Below are positions 6,001 to 37,136 of a stretch of 64,000 nucleotides of DNA, one piece after another (the first letter of the stretch is position 1; each line of letters begins with the position of its first letter). This stretch comes from Schmidtea polychroa (taxonomy: Eukaryota): contig CM097886.1 of assembly GCA_044892525.1 (NCBI GenBank), forward strand, positions 35,898,001 to 35,962,000, written 5' to 3'. A program made the position numbers and the translations under genes. The notes beneath the pieces are model-generated. The model had not been told where the DNA came from, searched no databases, and saw only the letters and a list, made by a program, of their open reading frames with translations.

Positions 6001-9000
6001 AGTCTGCCTGGAGGTCCAGCAGTAACAGTTATGATTCAAATCAATGGTAAAGAAACCAATGCTATGATAGACACCGGAGCTAATGTATCAGCGATAGCGA
6101 TTAATCAAATCCCCAGTAAACACTGGAAAAATATCGAATCAACAACAATTCACATCATAGCATGTAGTAAAGAAACAGTGGACGTGGTCGGAAGATGGTG
6201 GACTACATTGAGATACCAGGACAACGAAATTGAAACGTATTTGGCAGTAATACCAAAACTTAGCGTACCATGCATAATCGGAACGGATTTGATGCCAGAA
6301 TTGTTAAAAGAAGTCGTAATTGACTTAACAACCATGTGTTTAAAAGACAAAACCGGTAGAATATGCAAAATGAATGCAGTCATCAGATGTCCAGAAAAAA
6401 TAATAGTACCAGCAAAATCGCAGATGATTTGTCAGATAAAAGTGGATACGGGTATGGAAGGAGAAGTTATCTTTGAACCAAGCAAGTCATTCGAAAAGCG
6501 ACGAGAATTACCACTCGCAAGAGAAATAATCACAATAAACCAAGAAGGAGTGATACCGCTCAACATCACGAATTTCGAAGAGGAAGACAAAATCATTTAT
6601 GAGAACGAAAAATTGGGAAGATTGACCCCAATGATGGACATAGAATTACCGAAAGTGACCAACGAGATGATCAAAGATGATGAATTATGGACAATAGATA
6701 GTATGTTGTTGACGAATGATGAAAAGAAAAAATTACACCGATTGTTGGTAGAATATAAAGATATATTCGCCATCTCAGACTTAGACTTGGGTACATGCGA
6801 TGTTACCCTACATGCAATACCCCTCATAGATGAAACTCCAATTGCATTAAGACCATACAAGCTAGCAGAAATGCAAAAAGAAATAGCCGAAGCAGAAGTA
6901 CAAAAGATGCTGGACGCAAAAGTAATCGAACCAAGTTGCTCACCTTGGCAATTCCCAGTGGTCATGGTGAAAAAGAAAGATGGCACCCAACGATTCTGTA
7001 TCGATTATCGGAAGCTAAACGCAGTGACCAAGAGAGATACCTATCCATTGCCGGACATCAATGAGATGTTATTGATGTTGCAAGGGGCAGCATATTTTAC
7101 TTCTTTAGATCTAAAAAGTGGATACTGGCAGATTAAAGTCAAAGATGAGGACAAAGAGAAAACAGCTTTCACGTTGGGACGAGATCTATATCAATTCAGG
7201 AAAATGCCATTTGGACTGACCAACGCACCAGCATCATTTCAACGGTGTATGAACTTTGTCACCCATGGAATCAAACAATGTATGGTATATATTGATGATT
7301 TACTAATCTATTCAGCGACATTTGAACAACATCTAGAAGATATCCGAAACGTATTTATTAGATTAAGACAGTGGAAACTCAAACTCAAACCATCAAAATG
7401 CGATTGGGCAAAGGAAAAAGTCACGTTTTTAGGACACATAGTGTCAGCTAAAGGAAAGGAGCCAGATCCAAGAAACATTGAGAAAATAAAACTATGTCCA
7501 GCACCGAAAACTGTCACCCAAGTTCAGGAATTTCTAGGATTATGCGGATACTATCGCAAATTTATCAAAAATTATGCAGGAATTGCAAAACCAATCCAGG
7601 AATTAGTAAAGAAGGATATTTCGTTCATTTGGGAAAAAGAACAACAACAGGCGTTCGAAACGCTGAGAGATAAACTAATCGAAGCACCTATCCTCGTACA
7701 CCCAGATTTTAAGAAGCCATTTCTATTGGCAACGGATGCAAGCGGGTACGCGGCAGGCGCGATTCTGGGACAATTAGACGATGAGGGAAAAGAGAGAGTA
7801 ATCGGGTATTACAGTCGAACATTCAAAAAGCACGAAAAGAACTATTCGGTAACAGAACGAGAAGCATTGGCTATAATACAAGCTATCAAACACTTCCGAT
7901 ATTTACTATGGGGACATGAGATATGCATAACCACGGATCATCAACCATTAGTGTGGTTAGGGCAACATAAAGAAGCGTCCAGTAGACTGATGCGATGGGC
8001 CATGCAATTGCAAGAATACTCCCCATTTATAAAATTCAAAGCGGGAAGAGCAAATGCCAACGCCGATTGTATGTCAAGATTTATTTTCCCAGATTTGGTG
8101 GATTCAGAAATGCAACGCATATGCTTAATAGTAGCGGAAGATTTGGATTTCTGTCAATTACGAAAGGACCAACAAGAGGACGCGGAATTAAAACAAATTA
8201 TCGATTATGTAAAAACCGGAAAGACAGAGGTATATGCGAAAGACCAAAAATTAAAAGAACATATGGATAAACACCGACACCGATATATTATAGAGAAAGA
8301 TTGGTTGCTGATAATGGATGGGGAAAAACGATTAATGTGTATACCGGAAAACCGACGAAAAGAGTTACTAACGCAATATCACGATGGGAGATTGGGAGGA
8401 CATATGTCATCGAAAAAGACGTTAGCAAGAATGAAACAGAAATATTTTTGGCCTACGTTAACTGAAGATGTAACCGAATGGGTAAAAAATTGTCTAACTT
8501 GTGCAACCAGGAAGAATACTGGATCGAAATGGAAAGCACCTTTAACGCCAATGCCAGTACCAATAGAACCAATGACAATGATATCCATGGACGTAGTTGG
8601 TCCACTACCAGAGTCAGATAAAGGAAACGTTTACATTCTAGTGATCACAGACTTTCTTACGAAATTCCCAGAAGCATTCGCGATGCCAGACCAAAAAGCT
8701 AAAACAATCGCAAAAATTTTGGTAGAAGAGATATGTTGCCGATATGGAACACCAAAACAAATCTTAACCGATCAGGGAACTAATTTTATGAGTGAGATAA
8801 TGAGCGAAGTAACAAATTACTTCAAAATAGCAAAACTAAGAACATCTCCATACCACCCTCAAACCAATGGGATGACGGAAAGATTTAATGGAACACTTAT
8901 ACAAATGTTATCAAACTACGTTGACCGTCACCAACGAGATTGGGACGAATATATAAACCTATGTCTTATGGCGTACAGAATGTCGATTCACGCATCAACG

Positions 9001-12000
9001 AAAATGAGCCCATTCAAATTAATGTACGGAAGAGAATGTAACATGCCAATGGACCTGGAATACCAACCACCGATATCGCAGTATATGGAGATCGATGATT
9101 ATGTTACGAAATTCAAGGAAAGAATGCAAGAAATTTGGGAAACTGCGGGATTGAATATCAAGTTCTACCAGGAAAGTTATAAAGATTTACACGATCGAAA
9201 GAAAAACGTGAAGCAACATACGTTCCAAACAGGTGATTGGGTAATGATAGAAACCCCGGAATTAATTCCAGGAACCGCAAAAAAGTTACAACGCAACGGA
9301 AAAGGACCATATGAGATCTTATTCGTAGGCGAAACTAATGTAAGAGTGAAATTGGTAAATAACCCCTTTACCAGACCAATATACGTAAACGTGGCACGAT
9401 GCAAATCAATTCCAAAAACAGCCACTAGTCAACCAGAAGGCCGTACATTAACCACACGTTCGCAAACCTACCGAATGAACATGATGCAACAACTCGCAGA
9501 ACCGATCACTGGACGATTAGGTATCCAACCATCAGAAGCGGAAAAGATTGTAAAAGAGGTAAAAATTAAAATACCTGGATGGGCAAAAGATCGATTAGAT
9601 TTCGAAATATTAGGAGGATTATTGACGATGATCGAGAACTATGCAAATAGAGAAAGGACACACCCATTATTGCGAGTAGTCAAAAGCCAATGGCCAATAT
9701 TATTTACAATAACAGATCATTACGGAGACACACCATTACACAAACTCATGAAAGTAGGTAACAACGAGCAAATACTAGAAACAATAGAAGCATTTCACGA
9801 CTGCAAGCGATCAACAGAACAAACAAACAACCAAGGTTACACACCATTAATGATAGCCGCAAACAGAGGCAAAACAAAAGACATTATAACCGCATTACTC
9901 GATACCGGATCGAAAATAACTACACAAGACCACGAGCGGAAAAACGCTCTACATCATGCTATCGAAGGGAGAAGTACCGAGGCGTTCACGTCATTGATGG
10001 AACTACTATCATATGAGGACAATCGGGAAGTCGGAAACATGTATGATGGATTGTTAACAGCGATCAAAGAAAAACTGACGACAATTACCGAAATATTAAT
10101 TACATGGAGAAATCCAATTCGAAACGATTATATGATCAACGTAAACGAAGCGTTCACGAGAGGAGAGAACACGCTGATGAGAGAAGCTATGAAAGGACAT
10201 CATTTATTCGAAATCCCGAATCAATTACTAGAACGAGGGATAAAATTCACAAATCACAAAGACGAACAGTTAACAAAAAAGCGAATCGACACATTCGAAA
10301 AATCACTATTCCAATTTACTAACCAAGTACGAAATAAATATTGGGAAACGGTAAGTGTGTTATATATGATGGACACGATGAATAACATCCGCGAGAATTA
10401 CATGGATATTATCCAAATACTTACAGCAGAGGAACGAATCAATAATCCAAACGGAAAGAAAATGAAAATAAAGTATGAGAAATCCAGGGAATCAAAGTCA
10501 ACAACGAACCAAACGGTCACAAACAACGTCATCGAAACCAAATCAATGAGTATAGATCAAGAGGCAATAATACGCAAAGCAAAAGAAGTGTTCTTTGAGG
10601 AAATGCTAGAGCTGCCAGACGAAATAATATTGTCCAAAATAATAAAAGCCGTACACACATACGCAAGAGATCAAACCACGGGTTTAGATATCGGGAAAAT
10701 CAAAACCTTCTTGCCTCGAGCATTTACGATGGTAACGAAGGATTCCAGAACACCCCTACAACAAGCAATACTAGCGGCGAAAGAAAATAGAGCAATAACG
10801 ATCGTGAGAATCCTTGGAGAGATGGGCGAGGAAACCAACACGAAAAATGAACAAGGTGAAACCGCCATGATGTATGCAGCTATAACGAAAATACACCCAA
10901 AAACACTCCACATCCTACATCAATCAGGATCGAAACTAGACGAAAAGTCCAATGAAGGAAATTCCACCTTGGACTGGGCAACCATACAGCCAAACTTAGA
11001 AATGATCAGATTTATTTGCAAAAATGCGACAAAAGAAGAAGTTGAAAATATGTGCAAAAACACATCTCAGTTTCAATGGAATACGGTACGGAAAAATCTA
11101 GAAGCAATGAAATTATTATTAACCTGGAGAGTACCACAAAATAATAAATATGCGATAAATGTAAACGAATTCTACGAAAACGGAGAAAATGCGATGGTAA
11201 AGAATACCCTAACCAAGGGGGGGACACCTAAAATAATTTTAATAGTATTAAATAGAGAAGACCTAAAATTCACGCAAAATCAGAACGAGCAACAACGAAT
11301 TGGGAAACATCGTCGTATGCAATTGAGAGAGTTAGTTAAAGAATGGAATAGAAAGAGACATGCTGCAACGGGTAGAAAAGAGTTTGAATTCGAAGCAAAA
11401 TTAGCAAGAAACAGAGTGCTAACAGCATATCGCAGATTATTGAACGATATAAATGTCGAGGACGACATTTTAAACGACAGCGGGGGAGATAAACACGATG
11501 ACAATAACGGAAAAGGCCGAAAGGAGGATAAAGAGAAAAGAGAACAGGAGGAGGGTAAACCGGAAAACAAGGATTCGGATACGAAAAGAGAGGGAAACAG
11601 CCCGGGAACTAAGACCAAAGAGGAGGAAAAATCGAATAATGGAAAACAGAGGGTATGCCTACCTTTCACTAACAAAGAAATAGAGACAAATATGATATTA
11701 ATGATAATTATGCTTACCATGATAGAGTTAGTAACAGCTCAGGGAGGGACGAGAACGATAAAAGAAACCAAAGAAGCGGAGAATCAAGATAGCAAAGAGG
11801 ATGAACTAAAGCAAGAAAAGAAAAAGCAAGCACAAGAGCAGCAGTGGGATTTAAAGGAAGAATGGGACTTAAAGGAAAGGTGCATACTAGGAAGATGCAT
11901 GTCTAGAGCGTATCAGAAACTAGTACTGATAAATGAGGCCACAGAACCAATAACAGAAGTAAGAATACAAGAAGCATACCGAAATCGAGACGGGAAGAGA

Positions 12001-12693
12001 ATAACGAACGTCAAAGGAAAAGAGGTACACCTAGGAAAAGGTGGTGAAGTAGTAATAACGCAGATCCAACCTAGAAAAGAGCACAAAGTCTGTATTTCAA
12101 GATTAGGACCAGGCGAGAGATGCCATCAATATGTGACGCAGCAGCAGCCGCCGAAAGAATACACGGTTTGTATCTGGAGGAATGAATCAAAAAGAGAATG
12201 CCGACGATACCCGGGGAAAAGAGGAAAGAAAAGAAAAAACCACGACGAAAAGAACGAAGGAGGAAAGCACAAGAAAACTGGTGAGGAAGCTCAGGACAAC
12301 TATGTTTCGGAGGAAGAGATGGAAAAAATACAAAAGATGGCAAAGGAGGGTATGAACGAGGAAATAGCAAGAATACGGGAAAGGATGAAAGGAAATGGCA
12401 AAAGAGGAAACGAGAAAAGTACAGAAGCGATATCAACATTAACAAACAAGGAAAAACCAGAGAGTATAAGCGTGAAGCAGATGATGTGGATCAGTGGGAT
12501 AATAATAACAGGGGCATTCCTAATCATAACGGGGGGAACAATAAAAATAATTAAGGATAAACGACATCGCGGAGAACTGGAGATGACTCGAATCAGAAAT
12601 TTCCAACATCGAGTGAAACGACCAAGTGATATCAAACAAGAACAGTGGGTGGAGGCCTGGAACGCTCAGCGCCCTCCAAACTCACGTATATAG
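1..12693 (+). CDS. Giant polyprotein (Ubl x3, Bcl-2-like, Env, PR, RT, RNase H, IN, ankyrin, TM protein); 5' incomplete
   Basis: Frame is open from base 1 (RLQAEEERIKQ...); the track start at 64 is only a TTG. Motifs IDTGA, YIDD, TDASG, HDGRLGGH..C..C, DVVGP, TDQGTNF, TERFN, GPY. Confidence 0.95.
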   Translation, partial: RLQAEEERIKQERNQQRQEQPLRINMMKLVKDMKSQYCYNYGKSPRVVPMTEPEKVKEITTEMKTENSTTILKGNQRTQKIFWKKIKDKIEKEHNKAKTETEDENNKSEEQTSQLNHQMLQELESEETTIFERKKLKRVPRMRNLQINMMKRTKDVASSDEEEDYVSSLGGEILQPSEISEPPKGEIKEEESGNEITSESEDEDIEIKLRKAREEAIKQVAEILPVVVRNQEFIDVIPFRRFVQKVMKLERNEKDLIPNEEKSIIKNYMEKMKQADTTRYVIKIGTSRGLERMWIKNTVTDELFDWIREHLGSSRKKEYLYQYQGEQIKPDMHLVDALIWPGETQILKLHKEKQPANLYDWAKDAKAEYDFNIKLKLEQIKQCTLRRNLDKLIKQIQEQVEDNWDLLITRRAPAMYELMSRLRDTEMLRMSDWRTINLIHKYGRLKETQPQRLEITIWLPNEEKRRIKMSNQSTVDDLVSKINQEITEKVRSESSDGMVDDVVMMYDKIILRTEDDTSLSEMGMWDNHQIIRIVPMDEFRTRDVTYQKEIRDRMKTLYRKSTEIIEIHQQWLKEKELQGKITKLNTRSCRRTPWERVWNAESKEWEIRKGTFVETDIGETESESEEEEEEPPEYEEEARGQTSDDESETDVTSESENEARHIHAMRKKEREYADMDGEEATEAREREETERYKQLGDILAMGAKNQKRQVVALANIILKTSENIHNLRGMAKAIEEYRQYNEWYPEQLEQIIRKWRNQEWAQDTQERYHIQIKYPDKSIEELEVHPTTKIRELKKKLAYETPFHLQLFGKSLDDNADVGITPMRLEETNVLTMAETLGKPLKRKSKIIKPTKGSLSTPSPNKAPSKSNETEEVEEIILEDSDDEPGERSPLLVRWPTGAEMWTNNQPSTSYQQPTKLNIKEIIDNTTETETDEQFQKQREPTKVTPESQTDKIIDEWNEWLRNNDSSLPRTDNERNPNYENTREAGTMMEKRAKGRPKKQGEKSELKTKEQLKQEQGQVRLEKLDKIVWDLKEAQPTIERGEKWIRELLKDILIITNPQLRRLWQRKVASTEARQLWHTISGIIPKLIKEKTKTTKTDWDETKRVIEQLTTNANDDEHHLVVITYLMYNLMGLAARKIPNKQFANHVEMTVLIIENTIEPHIIRAGGWKRLIQAPRKNEQERSMQVRLKKLLNELEWELPMKDPASRKASINSLMMTMMIWMLCTSGATGFTIYDCDNMIMRDKYSLRDIEECRQASPNKLDIVRTKVTYHVYQESDFIRTQARECVVSKKVLAYYCGQYSYSTLILPGLDKEIVSIQREDCKELFRTGALKMHNGVTIHGQTGMIKTESVYVSGKVKSSDGSCNGGTYTIRGEVISGVVVIESYTVELKEYEAQFDANNYQMKTNPACKATENVCRTGVSTIIYEANTQKCRLQLLKSALFNEVKGEIYENENDEDGNDRVRMRNGKPMPPSPREKRLSTQKTPTALITDDPDLGMRFIKEKETTKCDSIVYKTNYAGIYMSRQIIDRAVGKIATEDVKLYLYANNKMDFLFHRGQTTLQKVYYDLIQNDCSLNKEILKTKLAIAITHPDNTMPSLPLPDGHFGRMVGEVMYTYQCTKTYARMPEKSILPEKRCANELEIRYKGQNRFVQPVTRIMNPVGFYPNLFNCSNAYGPLYERPDGKWMMLPGKTISEEPKKFGLIELATELDFKPIDVSNGGMYSPEDLETARLNVLFPARRESILSNMVTITGGTNYQSGPNYELLLSPDHFQQATSNMMKAMWGRFLVFGQMMAGILGIILIIQIVRVILTQMLACFDIYKREKKVNWKMIVGFLPFLAKTMVLHGHSKDIHRIKRLIKILTKIKGTDEEVGRRFRKVMYDEATRRQLKKNKPKFLDRFRSQSSNSDSDDDDNGNDKCLYPNRNPNEKPMETAPYWEKEKTNTWIANGSYIPPDIVGPQAALTMTQNMYPQLPSQPGMHYMPTRRTKSVDQADDVRTIAAMSLPGGPAVTVMIQINGKETNAMIDTGANVSAIAINQIPSKHWKNIESTTIHIIACSKETVDVVGRWWTTLRYQDNEIETYLAVIPKLSVPCIIGTDLMPELLKEVVIDLTTMCLKDKTGRICKMNAVIRCPEKIIVPAKSQMICQIKVDTGMEGEVIFEPSKSFEKRRELPLAREIITINQEGVIPLNITNFEEEDKIIYENEKLGRLTPMMDIELPKVTNEMIKDDELWTIDSMLLTNDEKKKLHRLLVEYKDIFAISDLDLGTCDVTLHAIPLIDETPIALRPYKLAEMQKEIAEAEVQKMLDAKVIEPSCSPWQFPVVMVKKKDGTQRFCIDYRKLNAVTKRDTYPLPDINEMLLMLQGAAYFTSLDLKSGYWQIKVKDEDKEKTAFTLGRDLYQFRKMPFGLTNAPASFQRCMNFVTHGIKQCMVYIDDLLIYSATFEQHLEDIRNVFIRLRQWKLKLKPSKCDWAKEKVTFLGHIVSAKGKEPDPRNIEKIKLCPAPKTVTQVQEFLGLCGYYRKFIKNYAGIAKPIQELVKKDISFIWEKEQQQAFETLRDKLIEAPILVHPDFKKPFLLATDASGYAAGAILGQLDDEGKERVIGYYSRTFKKHEKNYSVTEREALAIIQAIKHFRYLLWGHEICITTDHQPLVWLGQHKEASSRLMRWAMQLQEYSPFIKFKAGRANANADCMSRFIFPDLVDSEMQRICLIVAEDLDFCQLRKDQQEDAELKQIIDYVKTGKTEVYAKDQKLKEHMDKHRHRYIIEKDWLLIMDGEKRLMCIPENRRKELLTQYHDGRLGGHMSSKKTLARMKQKYFWPTLTEDVTEWVKNCLTCATRKNTGSKWKAPLTPMPVPIEPMTMISMDVVGPLPESDKGNVYILVITDFLTKFPEAFAMPDQKAKTIAKILVEEICCRYGTPKQILTDQGTNFMSEIMSEVTNYFKIAKLRTSPYHPQTNGMTERFNGTLIQMLSNYVDRHQRDWDEYINLCLMAYRMSIHASTKMSPFKLMYGRECNMPMDLEYQPPISQYMEIDDYVTKFKERMQEIWETAGLNIKFYQESYKDLHDRKKNVKQHTFQTGDWVMIETPELIPGTAKKLQRNGKGPYEILFVGETNVRVKLVNNPFTRPIYVNVARCKSIPKTATSQPEGRTLTTRSQTYRMNMMQQLAEPITGRLGIQPSEAEKIVKEVKIKIPGWAKDRLDFEILGGLLTMIENYANRERTHPLLRVVKSQWPILFTITDHYGDTPLHKLMKVGNNEQILETIEAFHDCKRSTEQTNNQGYTPLMIAANRGKTKDIITALLDTGSKITTQDHERKNALHHAIEGRSTEAFTSLMELLSYEDNREVGNMYDGLLTAIKEKLTTITEILITWRNPIRNDYMINVNEAFTRGENTLMREAMKGHHLFEIPNQLLERGIKFTNHKDEQLTKKRIDTFEKSLFQFTNQVRNKYWETVSVLYMMDTMNNIRENYMDIIQILTAEERINNPNGKKMKIKYEKSRESKSTTNQTVTNNVIETKSMSIDQEAIIRKAKEVFFEEMLELPDEIILSKIIKAVHTYARDQTTGLDIGKIKTFLPRAFTMVTKDSRTPLQQAILAAKENRAITIVRILGEMGEETNTKNEQGETAMMYAAITKIHPKTLHILHQSGSKLDEKSNEGNSTLDWATIQPNLEMIRFICKNATKEEVENMCKNTSQFQWNTVRKNLEAMKLLLTWRVPQNNKYAINVNEFYENGENAMVKNTLTKGGTPKIILIVLNREDLKFTQNQNEQQRIGKHRRMQLRELVKEWNRKRHAATGRKEFEFEAKLARNRVLTAYRRLLNDINVEDDILNDSGGDKHDDNNGKGRKEDKEKREQEEGKPENKDSDTKREGNSPGTKTKEEEKSNNGKQRVCLPFTNKEIETNMILMIIMLTMIELVTAQGGTRTIKETKEAENQDSKEDELKQEKKKQAQEQQWDLKEEWDLKERCILGRCMSRAYQKLVLINEATEPITEVRIQEAYRNRDGKRITNVKGKEVHLGKGGEVVITQIQPRKEHKVCISRLGPGERCHQYVTQQQPPKEYTVCIWRNESKRECRRYPGKRGKKRKNHDEKNEGGKHKKTGEEAQDNYVSEEEMEKIQKMAKEGMNEEIARIRERMKGNGKRGNEKSTEAISTLTNKEKPESISVKQMMWISGIIITGAFLIITGGTIKIIKDKRHRGELEMTRIRNFQHRVKRPSDIKQEQWVEAWNAQRPPNSRI
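835..1050 (+). other. Ubiquitin/SUMO-like domain 1 in polyprotein
   Basis: YVIKIG...LFDWIREHLG...YQYQGEQIKPDMHLVDALIWPGETQIL resembles the beta-grasp pattern; weakest of the three. Confidence 0.4.
1354..1605 (+). other. Ubiquitin-like domain 2 in polyprotein
   Basis: LEITIWLPNEEKRRIKMSNQSTVDDLVSKI...MMYDKIILRTEDDTSLSEMGM matches the Ubl pattern (TV.DL..KI; L.DD..LS..G). Confidence 0.6.
2299..2499 (+). other. Ubiquitin-like domain 3 in polyprotein
   Basis: YHIQIKYPDKSIEELEVHPTTKIRELKKKL...LQLFGKSLDD aligns by eye with ubiquitin [27 protein letters not shown]...LIFAGKQLED. Confidence 0.7.
3061..3525 (+). other. Bcl-2-like helical domain in polyprotein
   Basis: BH2-like IEPHIIRAGGWKRL preceded by amphipathic helices at BH1 spacing; the canonical NWGR is absent (DEHHLVV). 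The upstream part (NPQLRRLW...EARQLWHTIS) could alternatively be MADF/Myb-like. Confidence 0.6.
3628..5448 (+). other. Internal signal peptide + envelope (class III-like fusion) glycoprotein + TM anchor
   Basis: Hydrophobic LMMTMMIWMLCTSGATG then FTIYDC..YSLRDIEEC..YQE..REC..YCG: Cys spacing of chuvirus-type/retrotransposon-borne glycoproteins. NxS/T sequons (NCS, NYQS-like region); TM FLVFGQMMAGILGIILIIQIV. Confidence 0.8.
6001..6372 (+). other. Retropepsin aspartic protease
   Basis: VMIQINGKETNAMIDTGANVS and CIIGTDLM. Confidence 0.95.
6840..7560 (+). other. Reverse transcriptase (Ty3/gypsy)
   Basis: SPWQFPVVMVKKKDG, RFCIDYRKLN, LDLKSGYWQI, MPFGLTNAPASFQR, VYIDDLLI (YIDD at 7288-7299). Confidence 0.97.
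7700..8085 (+). other. RNase H (Ty3/gypsy)
   Basis: LATDASGYAAGAIL, YSVTEREALAI, TTDHQPL, NANADCMSR. Confidence 0.95.
8125..9480 (+). other. Integrase (HHCC, DDE core, GPY module)
   Basis: HDGRLGGH...CLTC; SMDVVGPLP; LTDQGTNF; GMTERFN; GKGPYEI. Confidence 0.95.
9721..11250 (+). other. Ankyrin repeats, two clusters (~9721-10250 and ~10741-11250)
   Basis: GDTPLHKL, GYTPLMIAA, KNALHHAI, RTPLQQAI, GETAMMYAA, GNSTLDWAT. Confidence 0.85.
11686..12693 (+). other. C-terminal type I membrane protein: signal peptide, FN3-like/Cys module, TM, short tail
   Basis: MILMIIMLTMIELVTA/Q; VVITQIQPRKEHKVCI resembles FN3 strands E-F; TM WISGIIITGAFLIITGG; ends NSRI*. Confidence 0.6.
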
Positions 12694-13213: not shown

Positions 13214-13298
13214 ACCAAACCTAGCTCAAAATGTAAATAATTGTAAATAAAATATCGAACCTGTATCGATAAGAACTATTTGTACATATAATTATAGA

Positions 13299-17734: not shown

Positions 17735-18068
17735 TGTTGGGCTGAGTCGAGAATTTAATCGTTGAAAAATAAGAAAGTAGGGAAGTAGAACATTAAGAAA
17801 AATAAAAATAAAATAAATAAAATCAGAAATAAAATAGAATAGGATATAAGGAAAATAATAATTAAGACATAAGAATTAAAACAAAAAATAAAATTAAGAA
17901 AAGATTAAAATAGAACAAGTTGACAAATAAATAAAGAGGAATTCAAGAAATAATAAGGAAATTAAGGAAATAAATAGAAAAACATATTAAAAATAAAGAA
18001 AATAAGGAAAAAACAACCTAAAAACAAGAAAATTATATTAAATTAATAGAAATAAGCGGTACTCAACT

Positions 18069-18105
18069 CTGATTGGTCCGCACAAATAAGAATTTGATAT
18101 ATATA
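18069..18105 (+). promoter_or_regulatory. CCAAT box (reverse, ATTGG) and TATA-like element in LTR A
   Basis: CTGATTGG 18069-18076 and ATATATATA 18097-18105; copy B has CTGATTGG and TATATAT at the equivalent position (46761-46788). Confidence 0.5.
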
Positions 18106-18128
18106 CAACTACCAAAAACATTAAATTT

Positions 18129-18204
18129 ACTGTTAACCCCGAGCATTTCATAGGTAAGAAAGAATGTTTACTGTTTTCACTGTTAACCCCGAGCATTTCA
18201 TAGG
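18129..18204 (+). repeat. 26-bp direct repeat (period 50) bracketing a putative 50-nt GT-AG intron (18154-18203)
   Basis: ACTGTTAACCCCGAGCATTTCATAGG twice; first copy followed by TAAG giving GTAAG. Confidence 0.75.
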
Positions 18205-18627
18205 ATCGACACTACTAGCCAAGCAACCGTCATTCAGAAAACTCCACATCTATTCAAAACCAGTTCAGAGACCGAAATACCATTCATCACAATAATCAAC
18301 ATCCAACGGACCACCATTAGAACTATTTGGAACGAACAACATTGAACTTTGACTCAGCCTAACAATAGTAAGGGGTATTTCATTTGTTTATAGATTTATT
18401 TAAGTATTTGCAAAGCTAATAGTAATGTTAAATATTAACGATTAAATATTTTAGTTAACTCTCTTCATTTGATTCTCCATTTTAATAACTTTAACGTATT
18501 GATGGAATTTGTATTATTTAAGTATTTCAGAATTAATAAAATATTTTTATCCAGATGTCCGTATTTTATTTGAATTAAAGATTTTATAAATTTTCATTTA
18601 ACGAGTAACGTGGAGTTGAGATACTCC

Positions 18628-18819
18628 ATGTCATGGTATGAGGTGCCTTCGGGAGCTCAGCCGGTGGACATGGAGTATTTCAATCACGCAGCTAGATTGG
18701 GCCGAAATGTGAAGGCTTCTTCACGGGTCCTATCGCTGAAGATGCGACTGAATTATCACAATGGGTTATGGTTAAAAGAATCGCTGGTAGACAATGATTT
18801 CACAAAGATAGTCGTGTGA
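18628..18819 (+). CDS. Small LTR-encoded ORF-a (63 aa)
   Basis: VPSGAQPVDME and LKMR motifs recur in a frameshifted ORF in LTR B (46227-46441). Confidence 0.45.
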   Translation: MSWYEVPSGAQPVDMEYFNHAARLGRNVKASSRVLSLKMRLNYHNGLWLKESLVDNDFTKIVV

Positions 18820-20324
18820 ATGAAGGGATTTTCAAGGATTTGCACAGTGATTGAGGGCGTCGCATTCTTTTTTGTTTTTCTTTCGTCAAGTCGTTTTCGT
18901 AAATCTTACCCCTATTGAAAAATGAGATCCAGACAACGATTTAGTGAACTTCGTCAAAAATAACGACATCTCATAGTACGCTTCATCTGGAAACATGGTT
19001 TTATCAATTTAATTGCGACAACGTCTATTTGCCGGACTCAGTAGAACTGATTTCGTATGAAATTCCGTTATCATAGACCCGAGGTCATCTAGCCTGTCCA
19101 GATTGCATGTCAGGTTACGAAAGTATTCTAAAAACTTTAACTAACTCGAAACTATAAAATGCGAGATTCTACGAAAACCTCTCTAATATTATAATCAGAA
19201 AGTTTTTATAGACTTAGTTATTTCAAAAATTATAACAGGTAAAATATCACCAAATTTAATTAATAACATTTGTTTCTACAATAAGAGCCAGGTCATCACT
19301 GTATATATCCAAATTATTGAACCTGAGAGAAATTTTCGAATGGCTAAGGACAGGTTCCATCGAGACGGCATTACATCTGAATAGGAAAATCCGAGTAGAA
19401 TGACGCGAGTAGTAAAATGCTTCAGCATTTGGTGGAATTATTCCCTCGACGATCACTGAAAAGATCCAATAAATTTCCAAACGATGGTGATCATTCACAC
19501 AAGTTGATAAGGGTAAAATTCCGCGATGAGAACTGACGGCAGCATAAATCATGATTCAAATAAATCACTGTGCAGAGAAAATCATATGACAGCAGGATCG
19601 ATAAAATCACCGTGAAAATGGCATACACCAAGTGAGTGAGATAAGATAGTAGCCATACACGAATCCATGTGGTGAGAGCACAGAATATCGGACTAGCACA
19701 CATGATAGTCGCGACACGGGACATTCACAATAGGTCGATAATGTAATCAACTAGTTGACAGTAGTATCCGTAAATTTGGACATGTGTTATGACCGATGAG
19801 ATATCCCATTAGGGTGTTCAAGTAATGGCTGATGTAAACTCATCACATATTCTCAGACAAATGGTAGACAATATAGATAATCACATTCACTACCGAATTA
19901 AAAGTGCACTTCCAATAACAAATTTCGAATCAAAAAATATGTTGAGAATAGCGATAGTAACTTGTTTTTAATAAATTTAAATAGATAATTTATAGCAAGG
20001 TTTAGTCGCGTACTATAATGTCCCTCTACTAAAGCGTTATTATATTATTTCACCAATATTATATTTACACCCTATTAATTATTACGCCCCTCAGGTATAC
20101 AGTTAGATCAATAGAGAGTCAAAGTTAATAGCATGCGTCAAACCGATGGCATTTGGTTAAATAAACTGTTTCAACAAATAAGATCCGTGGTAAAACCGGA
20201 TTGTAGAATGAGTTTTCCTTTTTTTTTTTTTCGTCGGTCAAGCATCCACGAATGGCCGTGGGTCGTATCTAATTTATTCCAAAATCGTATGTTCTACATT
20301 TCATTAGTATTATTTATAGCAAGC

Positions 20325-21077
20325 ATGCTACCAACCACTAAATCAGCATTACGGCCGTGCTTCTCGTGCGCGGATAAAAATACGGTGATAAAGGACCTAC
20401 AAACTCAGATTGGACGTTACAAGAGGAAGATAGACGAGCTGGAAGGGACATGGTTTAGTCCCGCTCGGATGAAAGAGATCCAAAAGAAGCTCGATCGTAG
20501 CGAGCATTGCCGGGACGCGCTAATATCTGAGAGCCGTGCCCAAAGAAGTCTAATCCGAGAACAATCCGAGGCACTGCATAAGGTTTACGTGCAGGCGGCT
20601 ACAACCCGAAAAATAGTGCAGATTCCCATCCGAGAGGCCGATGACATCTTTCCGCCTCATCACAACCTTTCCTCGAATCCATCTCCACCGTTCAAGAGAC
20701 CGTGCCGAGACTGCGTCGAAACCGAATTGTCCCCCAAGCGACCAGATGTTGTCATCACGGGTACCAGTAAGCCCCCCACTGCTAGTCCATCCGTATCAGT
20801 CACCCTTCTGCAAGTGGCCTCTTCAAGCAAACCCAAGCGCAAACAACTCTCTCGTGCAGAGCGCAAGAAGAGACAGCGCGAGCGCGCCACTACAAAGCCA
20901 AACATCCCATCCATAGAGGATTCAACCAGCGGTGGCAACTCTCACGTGTCCATCGACCTAACAACGGGACCCTCGGCACGAATCATATCAGCCGCTGGCG
21001 TAATGTGGGAAGAGAACGCTTCCGAGTTTTTTAACCTCGACGAATTATTCGCCGACACTGAATGGGAGAAACAATAA
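20325..21077 (+). CDS. LTR-encoded ORF-b: CxxC, coiled coil, basic NLS, acidic/aromatic C-terminus
   Basis: LRPCFSCADKN shared with 43656-44420(-); NLS KPKRKQLSRAERKKRQR; ATG 20325 is preceded by TTTATAG. Confidence 0.8.
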   Translation: MLPTTKSALRPCFSCADKNTVIKDLQTQIGRYKRKIDELEGTWFSPARMKEIQKKLDRSEHCRDALISESRAQRSLIREQSEALHKVYVQAATTRKIVQIPIREADDIFPPHHNLSSNPSPPFKRPCRDCVETELSPKRPDVVITGTSKPPTASPSVSVTLLQVASSSKPKRKQLSRAERKKRQRERATTKPNIPSIEDSTSGGNSHVSIDLTTGPSARIISAAGVMWEENASEFFNLDELFADTEWEKQ

Positions 21078-21200
21078 AATCCCAGTGGTGGTCAGGATGA
21101 GGAACAAGGATCCGATCTATGTTGATTATGATGTTTTCTCTTCTTTCGACAAACGTTAGTAAAGTGTACAGCTGAATCCTTGTGTCATAACATTGAAATT

Positions 21201-21206
21201 AATAAA
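21201..21206 (+). terminator. Candidate LTR poly(A) signal
   Basis: AATAAA followed by T/GT-rich sequence, 120 nt after ORF-b; not verified in B. Confidence 0.35.
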
Positions 21207-21342
21207 TCTTGTTGTATTACACGTCTTCGTTCATGAATAATTAGACTTTAATTAAGTGGGTCGAGTAGAGAACCCGCGAGATCTAGTGAGAAATTCCCAA
21301 TTTGCATTCAGCGAATCCCGATAAGCGGTTGTGTAAGGAAAT

Positions 21343-21484
21343 GGACGTAAGCCCTTCTATCGGCAGTCGTGAATGGGAAGTCGAGGCCTCAGCAAGGAGT
21401 AGTTTTAAGGCAGAAGCTCACCTGCTTGCTGGCGTCTCGCCTGCATAGTGCAGTACCAACGTGAAGTGATTCACGGGCACTATG
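21343..21484 (+). ncRNA. Conserved cis-acting structured RNA near the LTR 3' end (copy A)
   Basis: Three helices covarying across LTRs A, B and C; invariant AGTACCAA bulge at 21452-21459. Confidence 0.8.
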
Positions 21485-22733
21485 TTGGAAGAAAGTTATG
21501 TGGGGTTTCACTCCAGGTTGACAAATCGGTGGCACCTTTTATTCGAGATGGACAATCAACCCTTAGACCCGTCAACGTGGTAGAGTGGTCAGCCGAGGTG
21601 TAACCCCAACAATGCTATTGCTGTTTTATGTATATTTTTGTTAATACTTTGTCATTTTCCTTATCCCAAGAGCCAAGAGTTCCGACGACTAGAGCGGCAA
21701 AATTGGTTTTGCATTTGTTACTTTTTCCAGTCTCGAGTGCTAATGTCCTATATATATTTGTAGTTGTCTACTCTAGGCGTCTGGAAGTTCTCTTCGTGAT
21801 CATAAGGTACTTAGATGTCTAGTATGCTTAATTTGTTATTACGTTTTGTTTTTATGATAAGGTCTGGTCGTAAGCATGTGTCGATACCAGGGGTTGGCAC
21901 GTAGAGTCTACTTAGAATCCTCTAGATATAAGTAACCCGGATACCCGCCATGTTTTTTATGGAACCGAAAACCGGGTAATTTTAGACTGGTATCCGGTTA
22001 ATTTCATTTAAATAATTTTTTCCATTATTTCAAATTAAATGCAAGAGCCGAATCGGTGTTCTTAAACGACTAACGTCTTTGAACGACAAAAAAGGGACAG
22101 CACTTAGCGGCCTATAGATTTCGAGATGAGCGAATGTATAGATTCGGATTATTTTGAAAGGATGCAGCTGCAAATACTAGCGATTAATTTTTGCGCTGGC
22201 GAATTAGAGATTTCCAAAAATATTTTTAATCTACATTGCATTGACCGGCCGATGACCGCGGCCCGAGGAGACTGAGCTTTCCTCGCGATATCCGTCGTTT
22301 TATGGTTAATCAATCCTTTTGTACCTGAAACATTAGTATATATTGCCTGAAAATCGAAAAATACGATTTAAGTTAATCGTTAGGCGAGAAGTCGGCTAGA
22401 CATCATTCAATAAGCACGAAGACACGTCAAGAATCGCGAACCTTCAATGTATTTATCTTTAAAAATATTTTAATTTTGAATTATCCTAAGCGTCTAAAAA
22501 GGTGTATGATATGCATGATCGTGATCTCAATTTATTTTTTTTCACTCTTTTTTGATTGATAAAATTTTAAAAAAATATTTAAATATTAGTATGACATTTT
22601 TAAAAGCTGATAGTCTTAAATAAAAATCCGTATCATTGTTGCAATAAATAATAATTATTTGTCACATTTATTATTACATTTTTCATAAAAATTCGGAAGA
22701 AAATTCCATATTTTTTGTAAACACTTGATTTGA

Positions 22734-33364: not shown

Positions 33365-36190
33365 AAATAAAATCGAATTTAGTACTTACTTTTAAATGTT
33401 TACACTTTGGAATCTTTGTTTTTGATATCTATGGTTTCGATATGTTTATGTTTAATTTTAAAATAAGGCCGCCGCAGCACCGGAAAGTTTTATTTTGATT
33501 TATACTTTAGTATATACAGGGAAAATTACCGAAGAAATTGAAAACAAATTTACTTATATGCTTTAACTTTTTGCATAAACAGTCAGTTCATATTCTCCTT
33601 GTGTGTGGTATAAACTTTGAATAAAACTAATTATACTATACACGTGCGTGAATAGTAATAATGTAAGTAGCTTTGGTTATGCAAAGTGCAAACGATAATC
33701 GGTTTAAAATCGGATTTATACAAACGATAATCGGATTGCTCGAAAAACCGATATTAACAACCCTAGTTTTAACCTTCTCAAGAGTTGTGAAACAATCATT
33801 GCATTTATATAATATAATATGCCACGAAGAGAAAAAGCAAAAGCAAATAAAAATACATTTTGAACAGCCTACAGTTTTCGCAAAGGCTGAAATAATACAA
33901 TTTATCATCTGTTGGAATTCGAGCTGTGATAATCATAGAGAAAGACAAGTCACATGCATGACGTTTGAACGTACTTTTATTAAATAAGGACATACGTATG
34001 AAGGCTTAGTTTCACTCGCGAGTTTGAAAACATTCATCGCTGATAAAATATAATTTATTTTTATTTTTATGCACTTTATGTAAGTATATATGCTTTCAAC
34101 ATTTTCTGATCCATAATTTTTATTTCTGTGATCATTTTGATGACGTTTGTAAATTTAAAGATGAATATCTTACTGAAAGTTCTACTTTAATACAATGGGA
34201 GACATTTGTTGTAAATCAATTAGCAGTCAAAAATCACTTTTTTTAGATTTTTTCGAATCATTTGTCGTTTTTAATGGTGATCTTTTAATCATAGCAACTA
34301 TTTTCCTAACTTTTTAATGACCGGTTCAATCATTACATTGCTGATGGTTATATCAAATGTTTCCTCATTTAAAATATTGTCGACTGCAAAATAATATTCG
34401 TCATCTTCACAATCTTTGTCGCTAGACCAGTAATTATTTGTTTATTTGTCGTTATTTTCATATTTCTCACGTCATTTGTTTTCATTTTCAAATTCAACTA
34501 ATTCCAAATGGATAGATGGTGCTTTATAGAACCAAAACTACGGCTAGATGTATGGTATTTTGATCAAAACAATAATTGTTGATCTGTGGATAAAATCTTT
34601 CCAACTTTATTTATCACACTTGTTCCATCGATCATCAAAGCCGGATGGAGTTTGTGGGCGGCCCTGGGCCCAATTGACATTACTGTTATCAAGATTAAAT
34701 TTAAACAATGAAAGTCTTTCCTTGATTAGTAAATTTTCAGTTTTCATTTTTTTTCATATTTTAAACTTAACATTTTTAAGATTAAAGTTCTGAAAATATA
34801 TCTACTTATAGTTAAATTCTCTAGTTGTTTGTAATACTGCTTAATTTTTGTATAATTTTTCAAGGAATTCATAATTTTTATATTTTAAAAATTCTTCATT
34901 TTTATTCATTTTCAGTTTAGAATTATTGTAATCCCGAAATCTCGGGAATAATTTAGTAATTTAGATTGTAAATTAGGATTGTAAACCCGAATGTCTTATC
35001 AATAAGTGTTATGTATAAAAATTATTTAAAAATATTATTTTTAATATTTTATATATTTAAAATATATATTGAGACAAATTTATTACAATAATTCTGTTTT
35101 GTTTTAAAAATTAGATTAAGAAGCAAGTTTTTCAAATTGTGTATTAAATGAATATTTGGAATTTAAATGATTTCTTCAGATGTAACTGGTGACCACTCCA
35201 AATTGTATTGACCACGCAATTAGTATTGTTACGAGAAGCAAAACTCTCATTAACTTCCCAAAAAAACGATATAGGAGTTTCTGGATTTCAATATATGACG
35301 TTTCTATGGTAAGTCACACAGAAACCAAAATATGGTTAGGTGAAGGCTGTTAGGTGGAAATCAATAGCTAATAACTGTTCGATTTATTGCTGGTTGATGA
35401 AACAGAGACTGTGGAAAGAAACAAAACTAATACATAACAAAGGAATGATAGATAACATTCATGGTCAAGAAGTCGATATCCAAGAACTCAGTATGACTAA
35501 ATAAGGAAAACATGAAAGATTTATAGTATTCGAAATCAGGGTACAGAAACTGTTTACTGATGTTTATGACTCGGGCATATCAAAAGAAGATATTATCACG
35601 AAAGGAATTCACAATGATCGTATTAATTAAGTATTAACTACAAAACTAGAAATGTAAATAGAAGAAACAAGAATCTGGATAGAGAAATGAAAGACACGAG
35701 AGATATAAAGGGTAATGAAAGAATCTATGCATATTTATGTGTAACGGGCTAAAGAGAAGATAATAAAAGAATGAAAAACCAACAGAATGTGTAGACAAAA
35801 GAGAATTCCAAAATAGTAGCAATATGTAGATCGGCGAAATTATCCAGATATTATACCATTCAAAAAGAGCCAACCTACAGTTGGGGTTTAAACCCATCGA
35901 AGAAAGAAAAATATTACCAGAACAATGTTTTTGTTGTGGTGAAAAAGGACATTTGAATGTCCTCTAAAGAATAAATGTCTCATCTGTGGGAAGGAAGTAC
36001 ATTCTATTTAATGAAAGCAAAACAATAGAAATTTTCGAAGGATAGCCTGATTTCATGAGAAAGCAGGAAATAAAGAAGACAAAAATGCGGCTATAAATGA
36101 GGTCGAATATGAAGACTTTTGGTGGGTTACTGGTGGTTGAATGTTCAAGTGCTGTTACCAGCGTAACCCAGATTACAACATTGTTTTCCA

Positions 36191-36325
36191 CTTGGTACCC
36201 GTTGAGTAATCAACGTTGGTACTGTACCAAGGGGTTGAGTACTCGCAAAAATTGAGTGCGTTAGGAGCACTATAATTGTCGAGCACTCTATGGGTTCACG
36301 GACGGCCGATAGAAGGCATGTGTCC
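36191..36325 (-). ncRNA. Conserved structured RNA (copy C)
   Basis: CTTGGTAC-AGTACCAA-CGTTGA-TTAC-TCAACG-G-GTACCAAG; upstream GGAC-ACAT-GCC-TTCTATC-GGC-C-GTCC. Confidence 0.8.
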
Positions 36326-36503
36326 GATTTATTTCGGTCCCTCATCGCGATTGTTTTCCCAAACGCTTTTCTGTCGACCGTCTTGTCCTGGACAATCACA
36401 AAGTTTAATCACATATCCATCAGACAATGAAAATCATTTATTTAAACACTACAATATTACAATGTCGGTTTTACCCAGGAGGGGTCGCACTCTCAAACAT
36501 TCC

Positions 36504-36809
36504 TCAGGATCGTGGAGTGGCTTCCGGCCCTTTCGATTTTTCTTGCTCGGCCAGCCAGGCCCTTTTCAATTTTTCTCGTGTATTCCGCCCTAGCCGTTTA
36601 CGTTTCGGCTTGCTTGCCTGGGCTGGTGGGTATATCTTGGCCAGCTCCACAGGAAGAGGGCGAATCTGTTCTCGGAGAGCGTCCTGGATGAACCTTTCGT
36701 TCAGTTTGCTCTCGAGCGAGCGCACTTGTAGCTTCAGCGCTCGGATTTCGAGTTGATCCTGCTCCGCCTGGGTCTGGAGTTGTGAGATGTGTGTTGTTCG
36801 TTTCTTCAT
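36504..36809 (-). CDS. LTR-encoded ORF-b homolog (101 aa, coiled coil + NLS)
   Basis: ASKPKRKRLGR matches A's SSKPKRKQLSR; start trimmed to MKKRTT (track 36504-37079). Confidence 0.65.
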   Translation of the reverse strand: MKKRTTHISQLQTQAEQDQLEIRALKLQVRSLESKLNERFIQDALREQIRPLPVELAKIYPPAQASKPKRKRLGRNTREKLKRAWLAEQEKSKGPEATPRS

Positions 36810-37136
36810 CTTACCTTGCGTAGATTTTCGAGTAATTGGTACACTGAATGAAGATAATAATAAAATCCCATAGCTAGCTTCCAGGTGCGTAAAGGTGATT
36901 CGATTAATTGCATAAAAATAATAGATGAAGACACCCCCTAAGTTATAAGGCTCAAATGTAATAACAAAAGATAATTCATTATATGATGAAGGCACACGAC
37001 AACTATAATATAAAAATTTTAATAAAGAAAAAAGTCTACAATTCGTCATACTAACTACTAATGAGGTCAAACGCAACACAATATCACTAAATCAGATTAG
37101 TCAAATAGTTTTGTTCAAGTTACCACTTCCGACGAG

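What the first reader, a model, noticed from the sequence alone, without database searches (positions are those of the whole stretch)
21444..21484. Epsilon-like stem-loop with invariant AGUACCAA bulge in all three LTRs: possible non-tRNA priming signal
Seen: lower stem fully covaries (CATAGTGC/GCACTATG; TGTGAGC/GCTCATA; CTTGGTAC/GTACCAAG). The 8-nt 5' bulge AGTACCAA and single 3' G are invariant. The upper stem covaries (CGTGAA/TTCACG; CGTGG/CCACG; CGTTGA/TCAACG). It lies 70-130 nt from the LTR end. Bulge plus next base contains CCAAC, matching the LTR terminus CCAACA of A and B, and ACCA mimics a tRNA 3' end. Established: HBV epsilon has this architecture and templates RT priming and packaging; Tf1-type elements self-prime without tRNA. 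Inference: a priming/packaging element for an unusual reverse-transcription initiation.
Basis: partly seen in the sequence, partly recalled or inferred. Interest (0 to 1): 0.9.

Follow-up and report, generated by a model that had tools for sequence, protein, structure and literature searches.

The report
Conserved hairpin domain in giant-retroelement LTRs

Summary
Three copies (A 21440-21488 +, B 43283-43235 -, C 36233-36188 -) share the same stem / 8-nt bulge AGUACCAA / stem / loop with a single 3' G. The stems differ but stay paired. The hairpin is the last of three conserved hairpins (about 150 nt): 36 modelled pairs, 90% paired, 17 with compensatory changes. The fold is specific to the sense strand.

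The setting is the 3' end of 3.9-5.6 kb LTRs of giant Ty3/gypsy elements that match published Burro elements of planarians. LTR starts, terminal inverted repeats and a 4-bp target duplication around solo LTR C were found here. Each LTR also carries a small gene (ORF X) with an arginine-rich motif.

The hairpins end 68-123 nt before the LTR terminus, so in a 5' LTR they would lie just upstream of the primer-binding site. No 5' LTR or primer site is in the window. Four distant relatives show TGG-starting, tRNA-type sites there.

My best reading is a U5/leader cis-element whose bulge docks an invariant partner, such as the primer tRNA or the primer site (confidence about 0.35). Epsilon-like or self-priming is not excluded but has no positive support.

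The parts
21440..21488 (+). Lower stem 21443-21451 / 21477-21485, bulge 21452-21459, upper stem 21460-21465 / 21470-21475, loop 21466-21469, 3' G 21476, CC/GG extension 21440-41 / 21487-88.
21383..21438 (+). Hairpin 1, copy A: long stem with small bulges. The apical helix covaries with copy B.
21344..21368 (+). Hairpin 0, copy A: 3-bp outer and 3-bp inner helix, with the loop holding the conserved CUUCUAUC.
   Evidence: pairs checked by script; not in the covariance model
43235..43283 (-). Hairpin 2, copy B (bulge 43265-43272).
43287..43336 (-). Hairpin 1, copy B.
43353..43373 (-). Hairpin 0, copy B.
36188..36233 (-). Hairpin 2, copy C (bulge 36216-36223).
36237..36288 (-). Hairpin 1, copy C.
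36301..36326 (-). Hairpin 0, copy C.
17735..21611 (+). 3' LTR of the left giant element (3877 nt). It starts TGTTGGGCT and ends ACCCCAACA, an 8/9 terminal inverted repeat. Order of features: A-rich tract, TATA-type box, variable part, ORF X, hairpins 0-2, 123-nt tail.
   Evidence: inferred, because the 5' LTR is outside the window
43121..47290 (-). 3' LTR of the right giant element (4170 nt). It has the same 13-mer junction as the left element and ends ACGCCAACA (7/9 inverted repeat).
36120..41749 (-). Solo LTR C (5630 nt). It has the exact start TGTTGGGCT followed by an A-rich tract and ATATATA (41086-41092), and ends CCCACCA. It is flanked on both sides by AAAG, a 4-bp target-site duplication.
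20325..21077 (+). ORF X, copy A (250 aa): helical hairpin, basic helix, acidic tail. It lies inside the LTR, 306 nt upstream of hairpin 1.
43656..44420 (-). ORF X, copy B (254 aa); 37-41% identical to copy A.
36504..37526 (-). ORF X-like coding region of copy C, in two open pieces. Only the basic stretch is detectably similar to A and B.
18070..18104 (+). TGATTGG..TATATAT box after the A-rich tract of the left LTR. Its counterpart in the right LTR is at 46763-46787 (-). Putative U3 promoter.
   Evidence: 2 matches, 0 expected; function inferred
64..12693 (+). Giant ORF of the left element (4209 codons open in the window): mononegavirus-type fusion glycoprotein, protease, RT, RNase H, integrase, ankyrin repeats.
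52351..63915 (-). Giant ORF of the right element (3854 codons open in the window), with the same domain order.

Best explanation
The stem-loop is the 3'-most hairpin of a three-hairpin, roughly 150-nt RNA domain. The domain is transcribed in sense from the U5-proximal end of the very long LTRs (3.9-5.6 kb) of Burro-like giant Ty3/gypsy retroelements of a planarian.

In a 5' LTR this places the domain in the leader of the genomic RNA, 68-123 nt upstream of the LTR end and therefore just upstream of the primer-binding site. I propose that it belongs to the reverse-transcription initiation region, like the U5 stems and primer-contact motifs of retroviruses. The helices only have to exist, so they covary. 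They present the invariant asymmetric internal loop: 8 nt on the 5' side, one G on the 3' side, with fixed closing pairs.

The loop pairs with or docks a partner that cannot change. That partner would be the host primer tRNA (a part outside its 3' end), or the primer-binding site itself, whose sequence is fixed by that tRNA. Priming itself is then ordinary tRNA priming.

Shown: the structure, covariation, strand specificity, position in the LTR and invariance. Inferred: the assignment to U5, presence in the genomic leader, and the partner.
For: - The structure is real and lies on the sense strand.
- All 8 bulge bases, the flanking pairs and the 3' G are identical in three LTRs. Those LTRs are otherwise unalignable by blastn apart from short patches, although the two giant elements are 79% identical internally. 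Full invariance of every base fits base-pairing with a fixed RNA better than contact with a co-evolving protein. The linked ORF X is only 37-41% identical between A and B and barely recognisable in C.
- The location is inside LTRs. The evidence is the identical junction 13-mer, terminal inverted repeats, an A-rich tract plus TATA-type box in all three, and the AAAG duplication around solo LTR C.
- The LTR ends in ..AACA, as in relatives, where a TGG-starting site follows 3-7 nt later.
- AAUAAA or AAUAUA followed by GU-rich sequence lies between the ORF X stop and hairpin 0. This suggests, weakly, that the hairpins are U5.
- Retroviral U5 elements that contact the primer tRNA are established knowledge (named from my own knowledge, not tested here).
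Against: - No 5' LTR, primer-binding site or host tRNA gene is in the window, so no complementarity could be tested.
- No sense-strand complement of the bulge (up to 1 mismatch) exists in the parts of either element held in the window.
- Relatives at 42-47% polymerase identity lack the domain. They show no 7-nt-or-longer anti-primer-site motif in their LTRs, so this is not a family-wide device.
- The R/U5 border is only guessed from poly(A)-like hexamers, which are common in AT-rich DNA.
- If the TATA-type box near the LTR start is the promoter, the domain lies about 3.3 kb from the cap. That is an unusual leader.
Confidence: 0.35

Rival explanations
1. Response or export element. The domain is bound by the LTR-encoded ORF X protein through its arginine-rich motif, or directly by a host export receptor. 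This would move or stabilise unspliced or LTR-derived RNA, in the manner of the Rex, Rec and Rev response elements or of a constitutive transport element.
For: - ORF X lies directly upstream of the domain in all three LTRs.
- ORF X has a confident helical hairpin and a basic helix.
- Its remote homologues carry a strongly conserved arginine-rich stretch. One homologue gives a sub-threshold Pfam REV hit over that stretch.
- A 20+ kb element with at least 6 ORFs must make spliced and unspliced RNAs.
- An LTR retrotransposon protein needed for export of genomic RNA is documented for Cer1 (PMC10309623, abstract seen).
Against: - ORF X diverges fast while the RNA motif is invariant, the opposite of a co-evolving pair. 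A host receptor would escape this objection.
- No Rfam export-element family matches.
- ORF X has no Pfam family and no structural neighbour.
- The linkage may only reflect that both lie in the LTR.
Confidence: 0.2
2. Dimerisation or packaging signal. The bulge contains the self-complementary GUAC, which could form a kissing contact between two genomic RNAs. Alternatively, the domain is the site recognised by the Gag zinc knuckles.
For: - GUAC is palindromic and exposed in an 8-nt bulge (read directly from the sequence).
- Multi-hairpin leader domains are the usual packaging and dimer signals of retroviruses (established knowledge).
- The structure is on the sense strand.
Against: - Only 4 of the 12 invariant bases would be explained.
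- Dimer palindromes usually differ between diverged lineages.
- A site in U5 would also be present in spliced RNAs, and so would not discriminate the genome.
Confidence: 0.15
3. The bulge is a priming signal for tRNA-free initiation. It would work either as a template for a short primer that is moved to the matching CCAAC(A) at the LTR end (epsilon-like), or by pairing with the primer site and being cut to give a primer (Tf1-like self-priming).
For: - The stem-bulge-stem-loop shape.
- CCAAC in bulge+1 equals the terminus of A and B. By my own estimate, 5 pentamers against one fixed pentamer give about a 1 in 100-200 chance, before allowing for the several coincidences looked for.
- The bulge ends in ACCA-like letters.
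- Relative L004 has TTGGTAC, the complement of 7 bulge bases, exactly where its primer site starts.
Against: - No match to the epsilon family in Rfam.
- No terminal-protein family in the polymerase.
- Solo LTR C ends CCACCA, not CCAACA.
- Relatives have TGG-starting sites typical of tRNA priming.
- L004 itself has no such hairpin.
- An internal bulge has no free 3' end.
Confidence: 0.07
4. A 3'-end or expression signal of the LTR transcription unit. The domain would act as a downstream element that sets or suppresses polyadenylation or termination after ORF X, or as a 3' UTR stability or localisation element of ORF X mRNA.
For: - Each LTR looks like a self-contained unit: TATA-type box, ORF X, hexamer plus GU-rich stretch, then the hairpins.
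- With so long an R region, use of the 5' poly(A) site must somehow be controlled (inference).
Against: - Nothing ties the invariant bulge to the cleavage machinery.
- The hexamers are not conserved in B.
- Such signals rarely need three covarying helices.
Confidence: 0.1

Closest known systems
Retroviral U5/leader elements that assist tRNA-primed initiation (U5 inverted-repeat stem of avian retroviruses; primer activation signal and A-rich loop of HIV-1). Named from my own knowledge.
   Same: They lie within about 150 nt upstream of the primer-binding site at the end of the LTR. Their helices are kept by covariation, and a short single-stranded motif is kept constant because its partner is a host tRNA.
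   Different: No complementarity to a tRNA could be tested here. The motif is an 8x1 internal loop rather than an apical loop or a linear stretch. The LTR is 4-5.6 kb and carries a gene. The assignment to U5 is inferred.
Hepadnaviral epsilon encapsidation/priming signal
   Same: Lower stem, 5' bulge, upper stem and apical loop, with a bulge sequence repeated near a genome end (CCAAC).
   Different: No covariance-model match. The bulge is 8 nt plus a 3' G. The polymerase has an integrase and no detectable terminal protein. The element integrates with LTRs, and the third copy lacks the terminal match.
Tf1/Tf2-type self-priming LTR retrotransposons
   Same: They are Ty3/gypsy-class elements in which an upstream part of the same RNA pairs with the primer site.
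   Different: In Tf1 the primer is the very 5' end of the transcript, not an internal bulge. Neither the transcript start nor the primer site is available here, and relatives look tRNA-primed.
Response elements of complex retroviruses (HTLV RxRE and HERV-K RcRE in the 3' LTR, HIV RRE and TAR) and the constitutive transport element of type D retroviruses
   Same: A structured RNA in or next to the LTR, with protein-binding bulges or internal loops, paired with a small basic regulatory protein encoded nearby.
   Different: No family match. The candidate protein diverges quickly while the RNA loop does not. The domain is small (150 nt) and probably lies downstream of the poly(A) site.
Burro / GYPSM1 giant gypsy-like LTR retrotransposons of planarians (PMC6431247)
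   Same: A giant polyprotein with a mononegavirus-type fusion glycoprotein in frame before PR-RT-RH-IN, ankyrin repeats, a MATH/TRAF accessory ORF, multi-kb LTRs and an AT-rich host genome.
   Different: Sequence identity to the named Burro families could not be tested. No cis-acting RNA element or LTR-borne ORF was described for them in the papers I could read.

Membership tests
Hepadnaviral epsilon | Match to the curated covariance model of the family | tested here: not met
   Rfam release 15 gave no hit on any copy, either at gathering threshold on the whole window or at E up to 10 and 5 on the three regions.
Hepadnaviral epsilon | Stem, 5' bulge, stem, apical loop | tested here: met
   All three copies give this minimum-energy fold. 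The likeness is in outline only: the bulge is 8 nt and there is an extra 3' G.
Hepadnaviral epsilon | Polymerase with a terminal-protein domain that carries the primer | tested here: not met
   The Pfam scan of both giant ORFs lists RVP, RVT_1, RT_RNaseH, Integrase_H2C2, rve, Ank and a fusion glycoprotein, but no hepadnaviral N-terminal family. A diverged domain would escape this test.
Hepadnaviral epsilon | Bulge sequence repeated at the acceptor site near the genome end | tested here: inconclusive
   CCAAC in bulge+1 equals the LTR terminus in A and B but not in C.
Tf1-type self-priming | Upstream RNA segment complementary to the primer-binding site; site not matching a tRNA | not testable with these tools
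   There is no 5' LTR or primer site in the window and no host tRNA set. Relatives show TGG-starting sites.
Retroviral U5 initiation elements | Position in U5 shortly upstream of the primer-binding site | tested here: inconclusive
   The domain ends 68-123 nt before the LTR end. The R/U5 border is inferred only from hexamers.
Retroviral U5 initiation elements | Complementarity of the conserved motif to the primer tRNA | not testable with these tools
   No tRNA genes are present in the window or the loci.
Rev/Rex/Rec-type response element | Cognate small basic RNA-binding protein encoded by the element | tested here: inconclusive
   ORF X has a basic helix and its homologues an arginine-rich stretch. 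It has no Pfam family and no fold match. Binding was not tested.
Rev/Rex/Rec-type response element | Match to a curated RNA family | tested here: not met
Burro-like giant Ty3/gypsy LTR retrotransposon (context) | Giant polyprotein with env-type glycoprotein in frame before PR-RT-RH-IN, ankyrin repeats, and MATH/TRAF either as a domain or as an accessory ORF | tested here: met
   Pfam results match the description in PMC6431247.
Burro-like giant Ty3/gypsy LTR retrotransposon (context) | Long terminal repeats with TG..CA ends and a target-site duplication | tested here: met
   Terminal inverted repeats in L and R. Solo LTR C is flanked by AAAG. Pairs of LTRs could not be seen, because the 5' LTRs lie outside the window.
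Burro-like giant Ty3/gypsy LTR retrotransposon (context) | Nucleotide identity to the named Burro families | not testable with these tools
   No planarian genome or repeat library is on hand. The window's proteins are not in the protein collection.

The most novel reading that the evidence does not exclude
The invariant bulge copies the 3' end of the primer tRNA (...GUACCA) and pairs with the first bases of the primer-binding site. It would then act either as an internal self-primer after cleavage, or as the template of a short primer that is moved to the matching CCAAC(A) at the LTR end. That would be a tRNA-independent or tRNA-mimicking start of reverse transcription in an integrase-bearing giant retroelement.
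Probability: 0.07. Interest if true: 0.85.

Novelty: new variant of a known kind. Interest (0 to 1): 0.5.

Why it matters
Burro-type elements are among the largest retroelements known, and the papers seen here describe them as abundant and transcribed in planarians. How a genome of more than 20 kb with many accessory genes is reverse-transcribed, exported and packaged is unknown.

A small RNA domain kept intact in LTRs that have otherwise diverged beyond alignment marks a step these elements cannot do without. Its 12 unchanging bases give a precise handle for finding the partner. The work also shows that these LTRs carry their own gene (ORF X, arginine-rich), which is rare among LTR elements. 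If the bulge turned out to replace or mimic the primer tRNA, that would be a new way of starting reverse transcription.

Tried and rejected
- **Outside copies of the RNA.** An exact-pattern scan of metagenome and viral contigs gave 142 matches, but only one had even a weak lower stem, so these are chance. A longer pattern hit one bacterial methyltransferase gene by chance and nothing in viral contigs. The covariance model found only the three window copies and nothing in seven related loci.
- **Copies from the same genome.** The window's proteins are not in the protein or contig collections. ORF X gave no word-index hits. Its HMM hits are UniParc-only records without DNA.
- **Earlier LTR models, dropped.** One was a 112-128-nt LTR starting right after hairpin 2 (TGTTGG in A only, no counterpart in B or C). 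Another was a 1.57-kb solo LTR C with an AAAGT duplication, which a null test showed to be meaningless: 51% of random region pairs give one. A third was a start at 19940. All were replaced by the 9-mer start shared by all three LTRs.
- **B as a 5' LTR.** B's LTR end is followed by TGG, but no gag-like coding follows, so this is chance.
- **A cis partner of the bulge inside the window.** None was found on the sense strand.
- **An anti-primer-site motif in relatives' LTRs.** None of 7 nt or more was found.
- **Known RNA families, tRNA-like genes and ribozymes.** None matched.
- **ORF X identity.** Pfam, AlphaFold plus Foldseek on viral structures gave no family.
- **Grohme et al. 2018.** The paper could not be read.

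Full report
The 10-mer AGTACCAACG occurs exactly three times: 21452 (+), 36223 (-) and 43272 (-). Each copy, folded alone, gives the same minimum-energy structure:
- a lower stem of 8-9 bp, extended by a CC/GG pair of pairs;
- an unpaired AGUACCAA on the 5' side;
- an upper stem of 5-6 bp that always begins CGU...ACG;
- an apical loop of 4-7 nt that is not conserved;
- one unpaired G on the 3' side.

In a 692-column alignment of the three regions only 105 columns are invariant. The longest invariant run is the 12-nt CAGTACCAACGT, and the next longest is 4.

**2. It is one of three hairpins.** Folding 150 nt around each copy gives the same architecture three times. A long hairpin 1 lies directly upstream. 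Further upstream is a small two-helix hairpin 0 whose loop holds the conserved CUUCUA.

I built a covariance model of hairpins 1 and 2, and it realigned the three copies. On that alignment:
- 36 pairs are 90.4% paired, against 34-47% when the 3' partners are slid by one to three columns;
- 17 pairs show changes on both sides, and none of 500 shuffles reaches the observed values;

G-U pairs are frequent. The sense strand folds 4-13 kcal/mol better than the antisense strand, with z-scores of -3.8, -4.2 and -6.3. This is therefore an RNA of the same sense as the element's genes. Three sequences are few, and the alignment was fitted to the structure. However, the slid-partner control and the independent single-sequence folds agree.

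**3. The setting.** The window holds two giant retroelements in inverted orientation. They are 79% identical over 1073-16501 against 63995-48504. Each has an open frame of about 4000 codons encoding a mononegavirus-type fusion glycoprotein, protease, reverse transcriptase, RNase H, integrase and ankyrin repeats. Accessory ORFs follow, among them a RING+MATH (TRAF-like) protein.

This matches the published description of the Burro/GYPSM1 giant gypsy-like elements of planarians: a polyprotein of about 5000 aa, env in frame between gag and pol, MATH/TRAF and ankyrin, and more than 30 kb with LTRs (PMC6431247). Their hosts have genomes of more than 70% A/T (PMC11410931). Burro1 is reported as abundant and expressed (PMC8532177). 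Relatives at 42-47% identity with the same domain order occur in metagenome assemblies.

**4. The three copies are in LTRs.** After the last well-conserved accessory ORF, the two elements share a roughly 60-nt block in otherwise diverged sequence. It contains an identical 13-mer at 17731 (+) and 47294 (-).
- From its fifth base it reads TGTTGGGCT. This is the inverted repeat of the element ends ..ACCCCAACA (8 of 9) and ..ACGCCAACA (7 of 9).
- The same exact 9-mer occurs once more, at 41749 (-), upstream of copy C.
- In all three cases it is followed by a long A-rich tract and then a TATA-type box.
- Copy C's unit, 41749 down to 36120, is flanked on both sides by AAAG, as expected for a solo LTR with a 4-bp target duplication.

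The LTRs are thus 3877, 4170 and 5630 nt long. The 5' LTRs of both giant elements lie outside the window, so LTR pairs were not seen directly.

**5. A gene in the LTR.** Between the TATA-type box and the hairpins, each LTR carries ORF X.
- Copies A and B are 250 and 254 aa and 37-41% identical (E = 2e-44). Copy C is in two open pieces and keeps only a similar basic stretch.
- The predicted structure is a confident helical hairpin (residues 13-97), a basic helix (177-188) and disordered remainder.
- A profile search of 1.8 billion representative proteins found 15 hits (best E = 6e-14). All ten whose source was looked up are UniParc-only records. In most of the ten scanned against Pfam the ORF X domain is fused to an unrelated host domain. 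This is the mark of a dispersed repeat caught in gene models.
- The hits share a strongly conserved arginine-rich stretch after the helical domain, and some have PPPY.
- No Pfam family and no structural neighbour was found.

**6. What could not be found.** No Rfam family matches any copy, at gathering or lax thresholds. There are no tRNA genes in the window or in the related loci. No other copy of the domain could be fetched:
- pattern scans gave only chance matches;
- the model finds nothing in seven related loci;
- the source genome is not in the collections.

**7. Priming in relatives.** Four related elements allow the 5' LTR end to be read. In each, the LTR ends in a short A/C-rich motif (..AACA in L001 and L002). 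A site beginning TGG follows 3-7 nt later: TGGCGCC.. in L001 and L150, TGGTGGCC.. in L002, TGGTACGC.. in L004. That is the form of tRNA-complementary primer sites.

In L004 the site with its preceding base reads TTGGTAC, the complement of seven bulge bases. L004 has no such hairpin, however. None of the four has an anti-primer-site motif of 7 nt or more in its LTR. I therefore treat the L004 match as a lead, not as evidence.

**8. How it most likely works.** The stems vary freely so long as they pair, while 12 bases around an 8x1 internal loop do not vary at all. This holds across LTRs so diverged that blastn aligns almost nothing else in them. Invariance of this kind points to a partner that itself cannot change.
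- The linked ORF X changes fast, so it is a poor candidate.
- A host molecule is a good one, and invariance of every base suggests base-pairing.
- The position is the last 70-270 nt of the LTR. It probably lies downstream of a poly(A)-type hexamer with a GU-rich stretch in A and C, or a variant hexamer in B. It would then be U5, which is where retroviruses keep the stems and motifs that organise tRNA-primed initiation.

I therefore propose a U5/leader initiation element whose bulge contacts the primer tRNA or the primer site (confidence 0.35). The rivals are:
- a response or export element for ORF X or a host receptor (0.2);
- a dimer or packaging contact through the self-complementary GUAC (0.15);
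- a 3'-end or expression signal of the LTR transcription unit (0.1);

The last has only shape and two short sequence coincidences in its favour. Against it stand the lack of an epsilon model match, the lack of a terminal-protein family in the polymerase, the different terminus of copy C, and the tRNA-type sites of relatives.

**9. Novelty.** Structured leader and LTR elements are a known kind. This particular domain, its invariant loop and its place in multi-kb, gene-bearing LTRs of giant planarian elements are not in Rfam or in the papers I could read. I rate it a new variant of a known kind, of moderate interest. It would be of high interest if the bulge proves to mimic or replace the primer.

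**10. Declaration of a slip.** None was put into a tool call, a note or a script, and none is used as evidence here. All sequence statements above come from tool outputs.

Noticed in passing
window 20325-21077 (+), 43656-44420 (-), 36504-37526 (-): The LTRs carry their own gene, ORF X: a helical hairpin plus an arginine-rich stretch. Remote homologues (UniParc-only records) also show PPPY, and most of those scanned are fused to unrelated host domains in gene models. An LTR-borne coding gene is unusual.
   Followed up: partly
window 17688-17750 (+) and 47275-47336 (-): A roughly 60-nt block at the junction of internal region and LTR is conserved between the two elements in otherwise diverged sequence. 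It includes a perfect 7-bp hairpin (AATTGCG / CGCAATT) just upstream of the LTR start, where a polypurine tract would be expected. No clear purine tract is present.
   Followed up: partly
window 17770-18040 (+), 46800-47200 (-), 41130-41680 (-): Each LTR begins with a 270-550-nt A-rich, low-complexity tract followed by a TATA-type box. In L and R the box is preceded by TGATTGG, an inverted CCAAT-like motif.
   Followed up: partly
window 18140-18205 (+): A 25-nt direct repeat (ctgttaaccccgagcatttcatagg, two copies) lies just downstream of the TATA-type box of the left LTR.
   Followed up: no
window 31565-33364 (+): An intact-looking hAT transposase ORF (599 aa, with a BED zinc finger and the hAT dimerisation domain) lies between the LTRs.
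   Followed up: no
window 13299-14687 (+) and 50346-51734 (-): An accessory ORF of 462 aa with a RING finger and a MATH/TRAF domain is present in both giant elements. Three further accessory ORFs have no family.
   Followed up: no
window 18000-20300 (+) vs 44420-46870 (-): The middle 2.3-2.5 kb of the two LTRs share no detectable similarity, although the elements are 79% identical internally. This could reflect rapid divergence, recombination or nested insertions.
   Followed up: no
L002 1-6700, L003 17000-24600; proteins P0019, P0049, P0053: Related giant retroelement ORFs sit on metagenome contigs next to plainly bacterial genes, and some are labelled as bacterial MAG proteins. This is most likely chimeric assembly or eukaryotic contamination of bins.
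   Followed up: no
L001 about 390-410 and 450-470: The LTR of relative L001 holds a same-sense near-duplicate (15 of 18 bases) of its own primer-site region.
   Followed up: no
L001 16872-18689: A DNA polymerase B (DNA_pol_B_2) gene lies just beyond the 3' LTR of relative L001. It may belong to a neighbouring Polinton-like element.
   Followed up: no
L150 1-53 and 16741-16792: Contig L150 begins and ends in the same LTR, with a unit length of 16,739 nt. It is therefore one whole element assembled across its repeat, with a TATATAAGG box and a CCACGTGG palindrome also seen in L002's LTR.
   Followed up: partly
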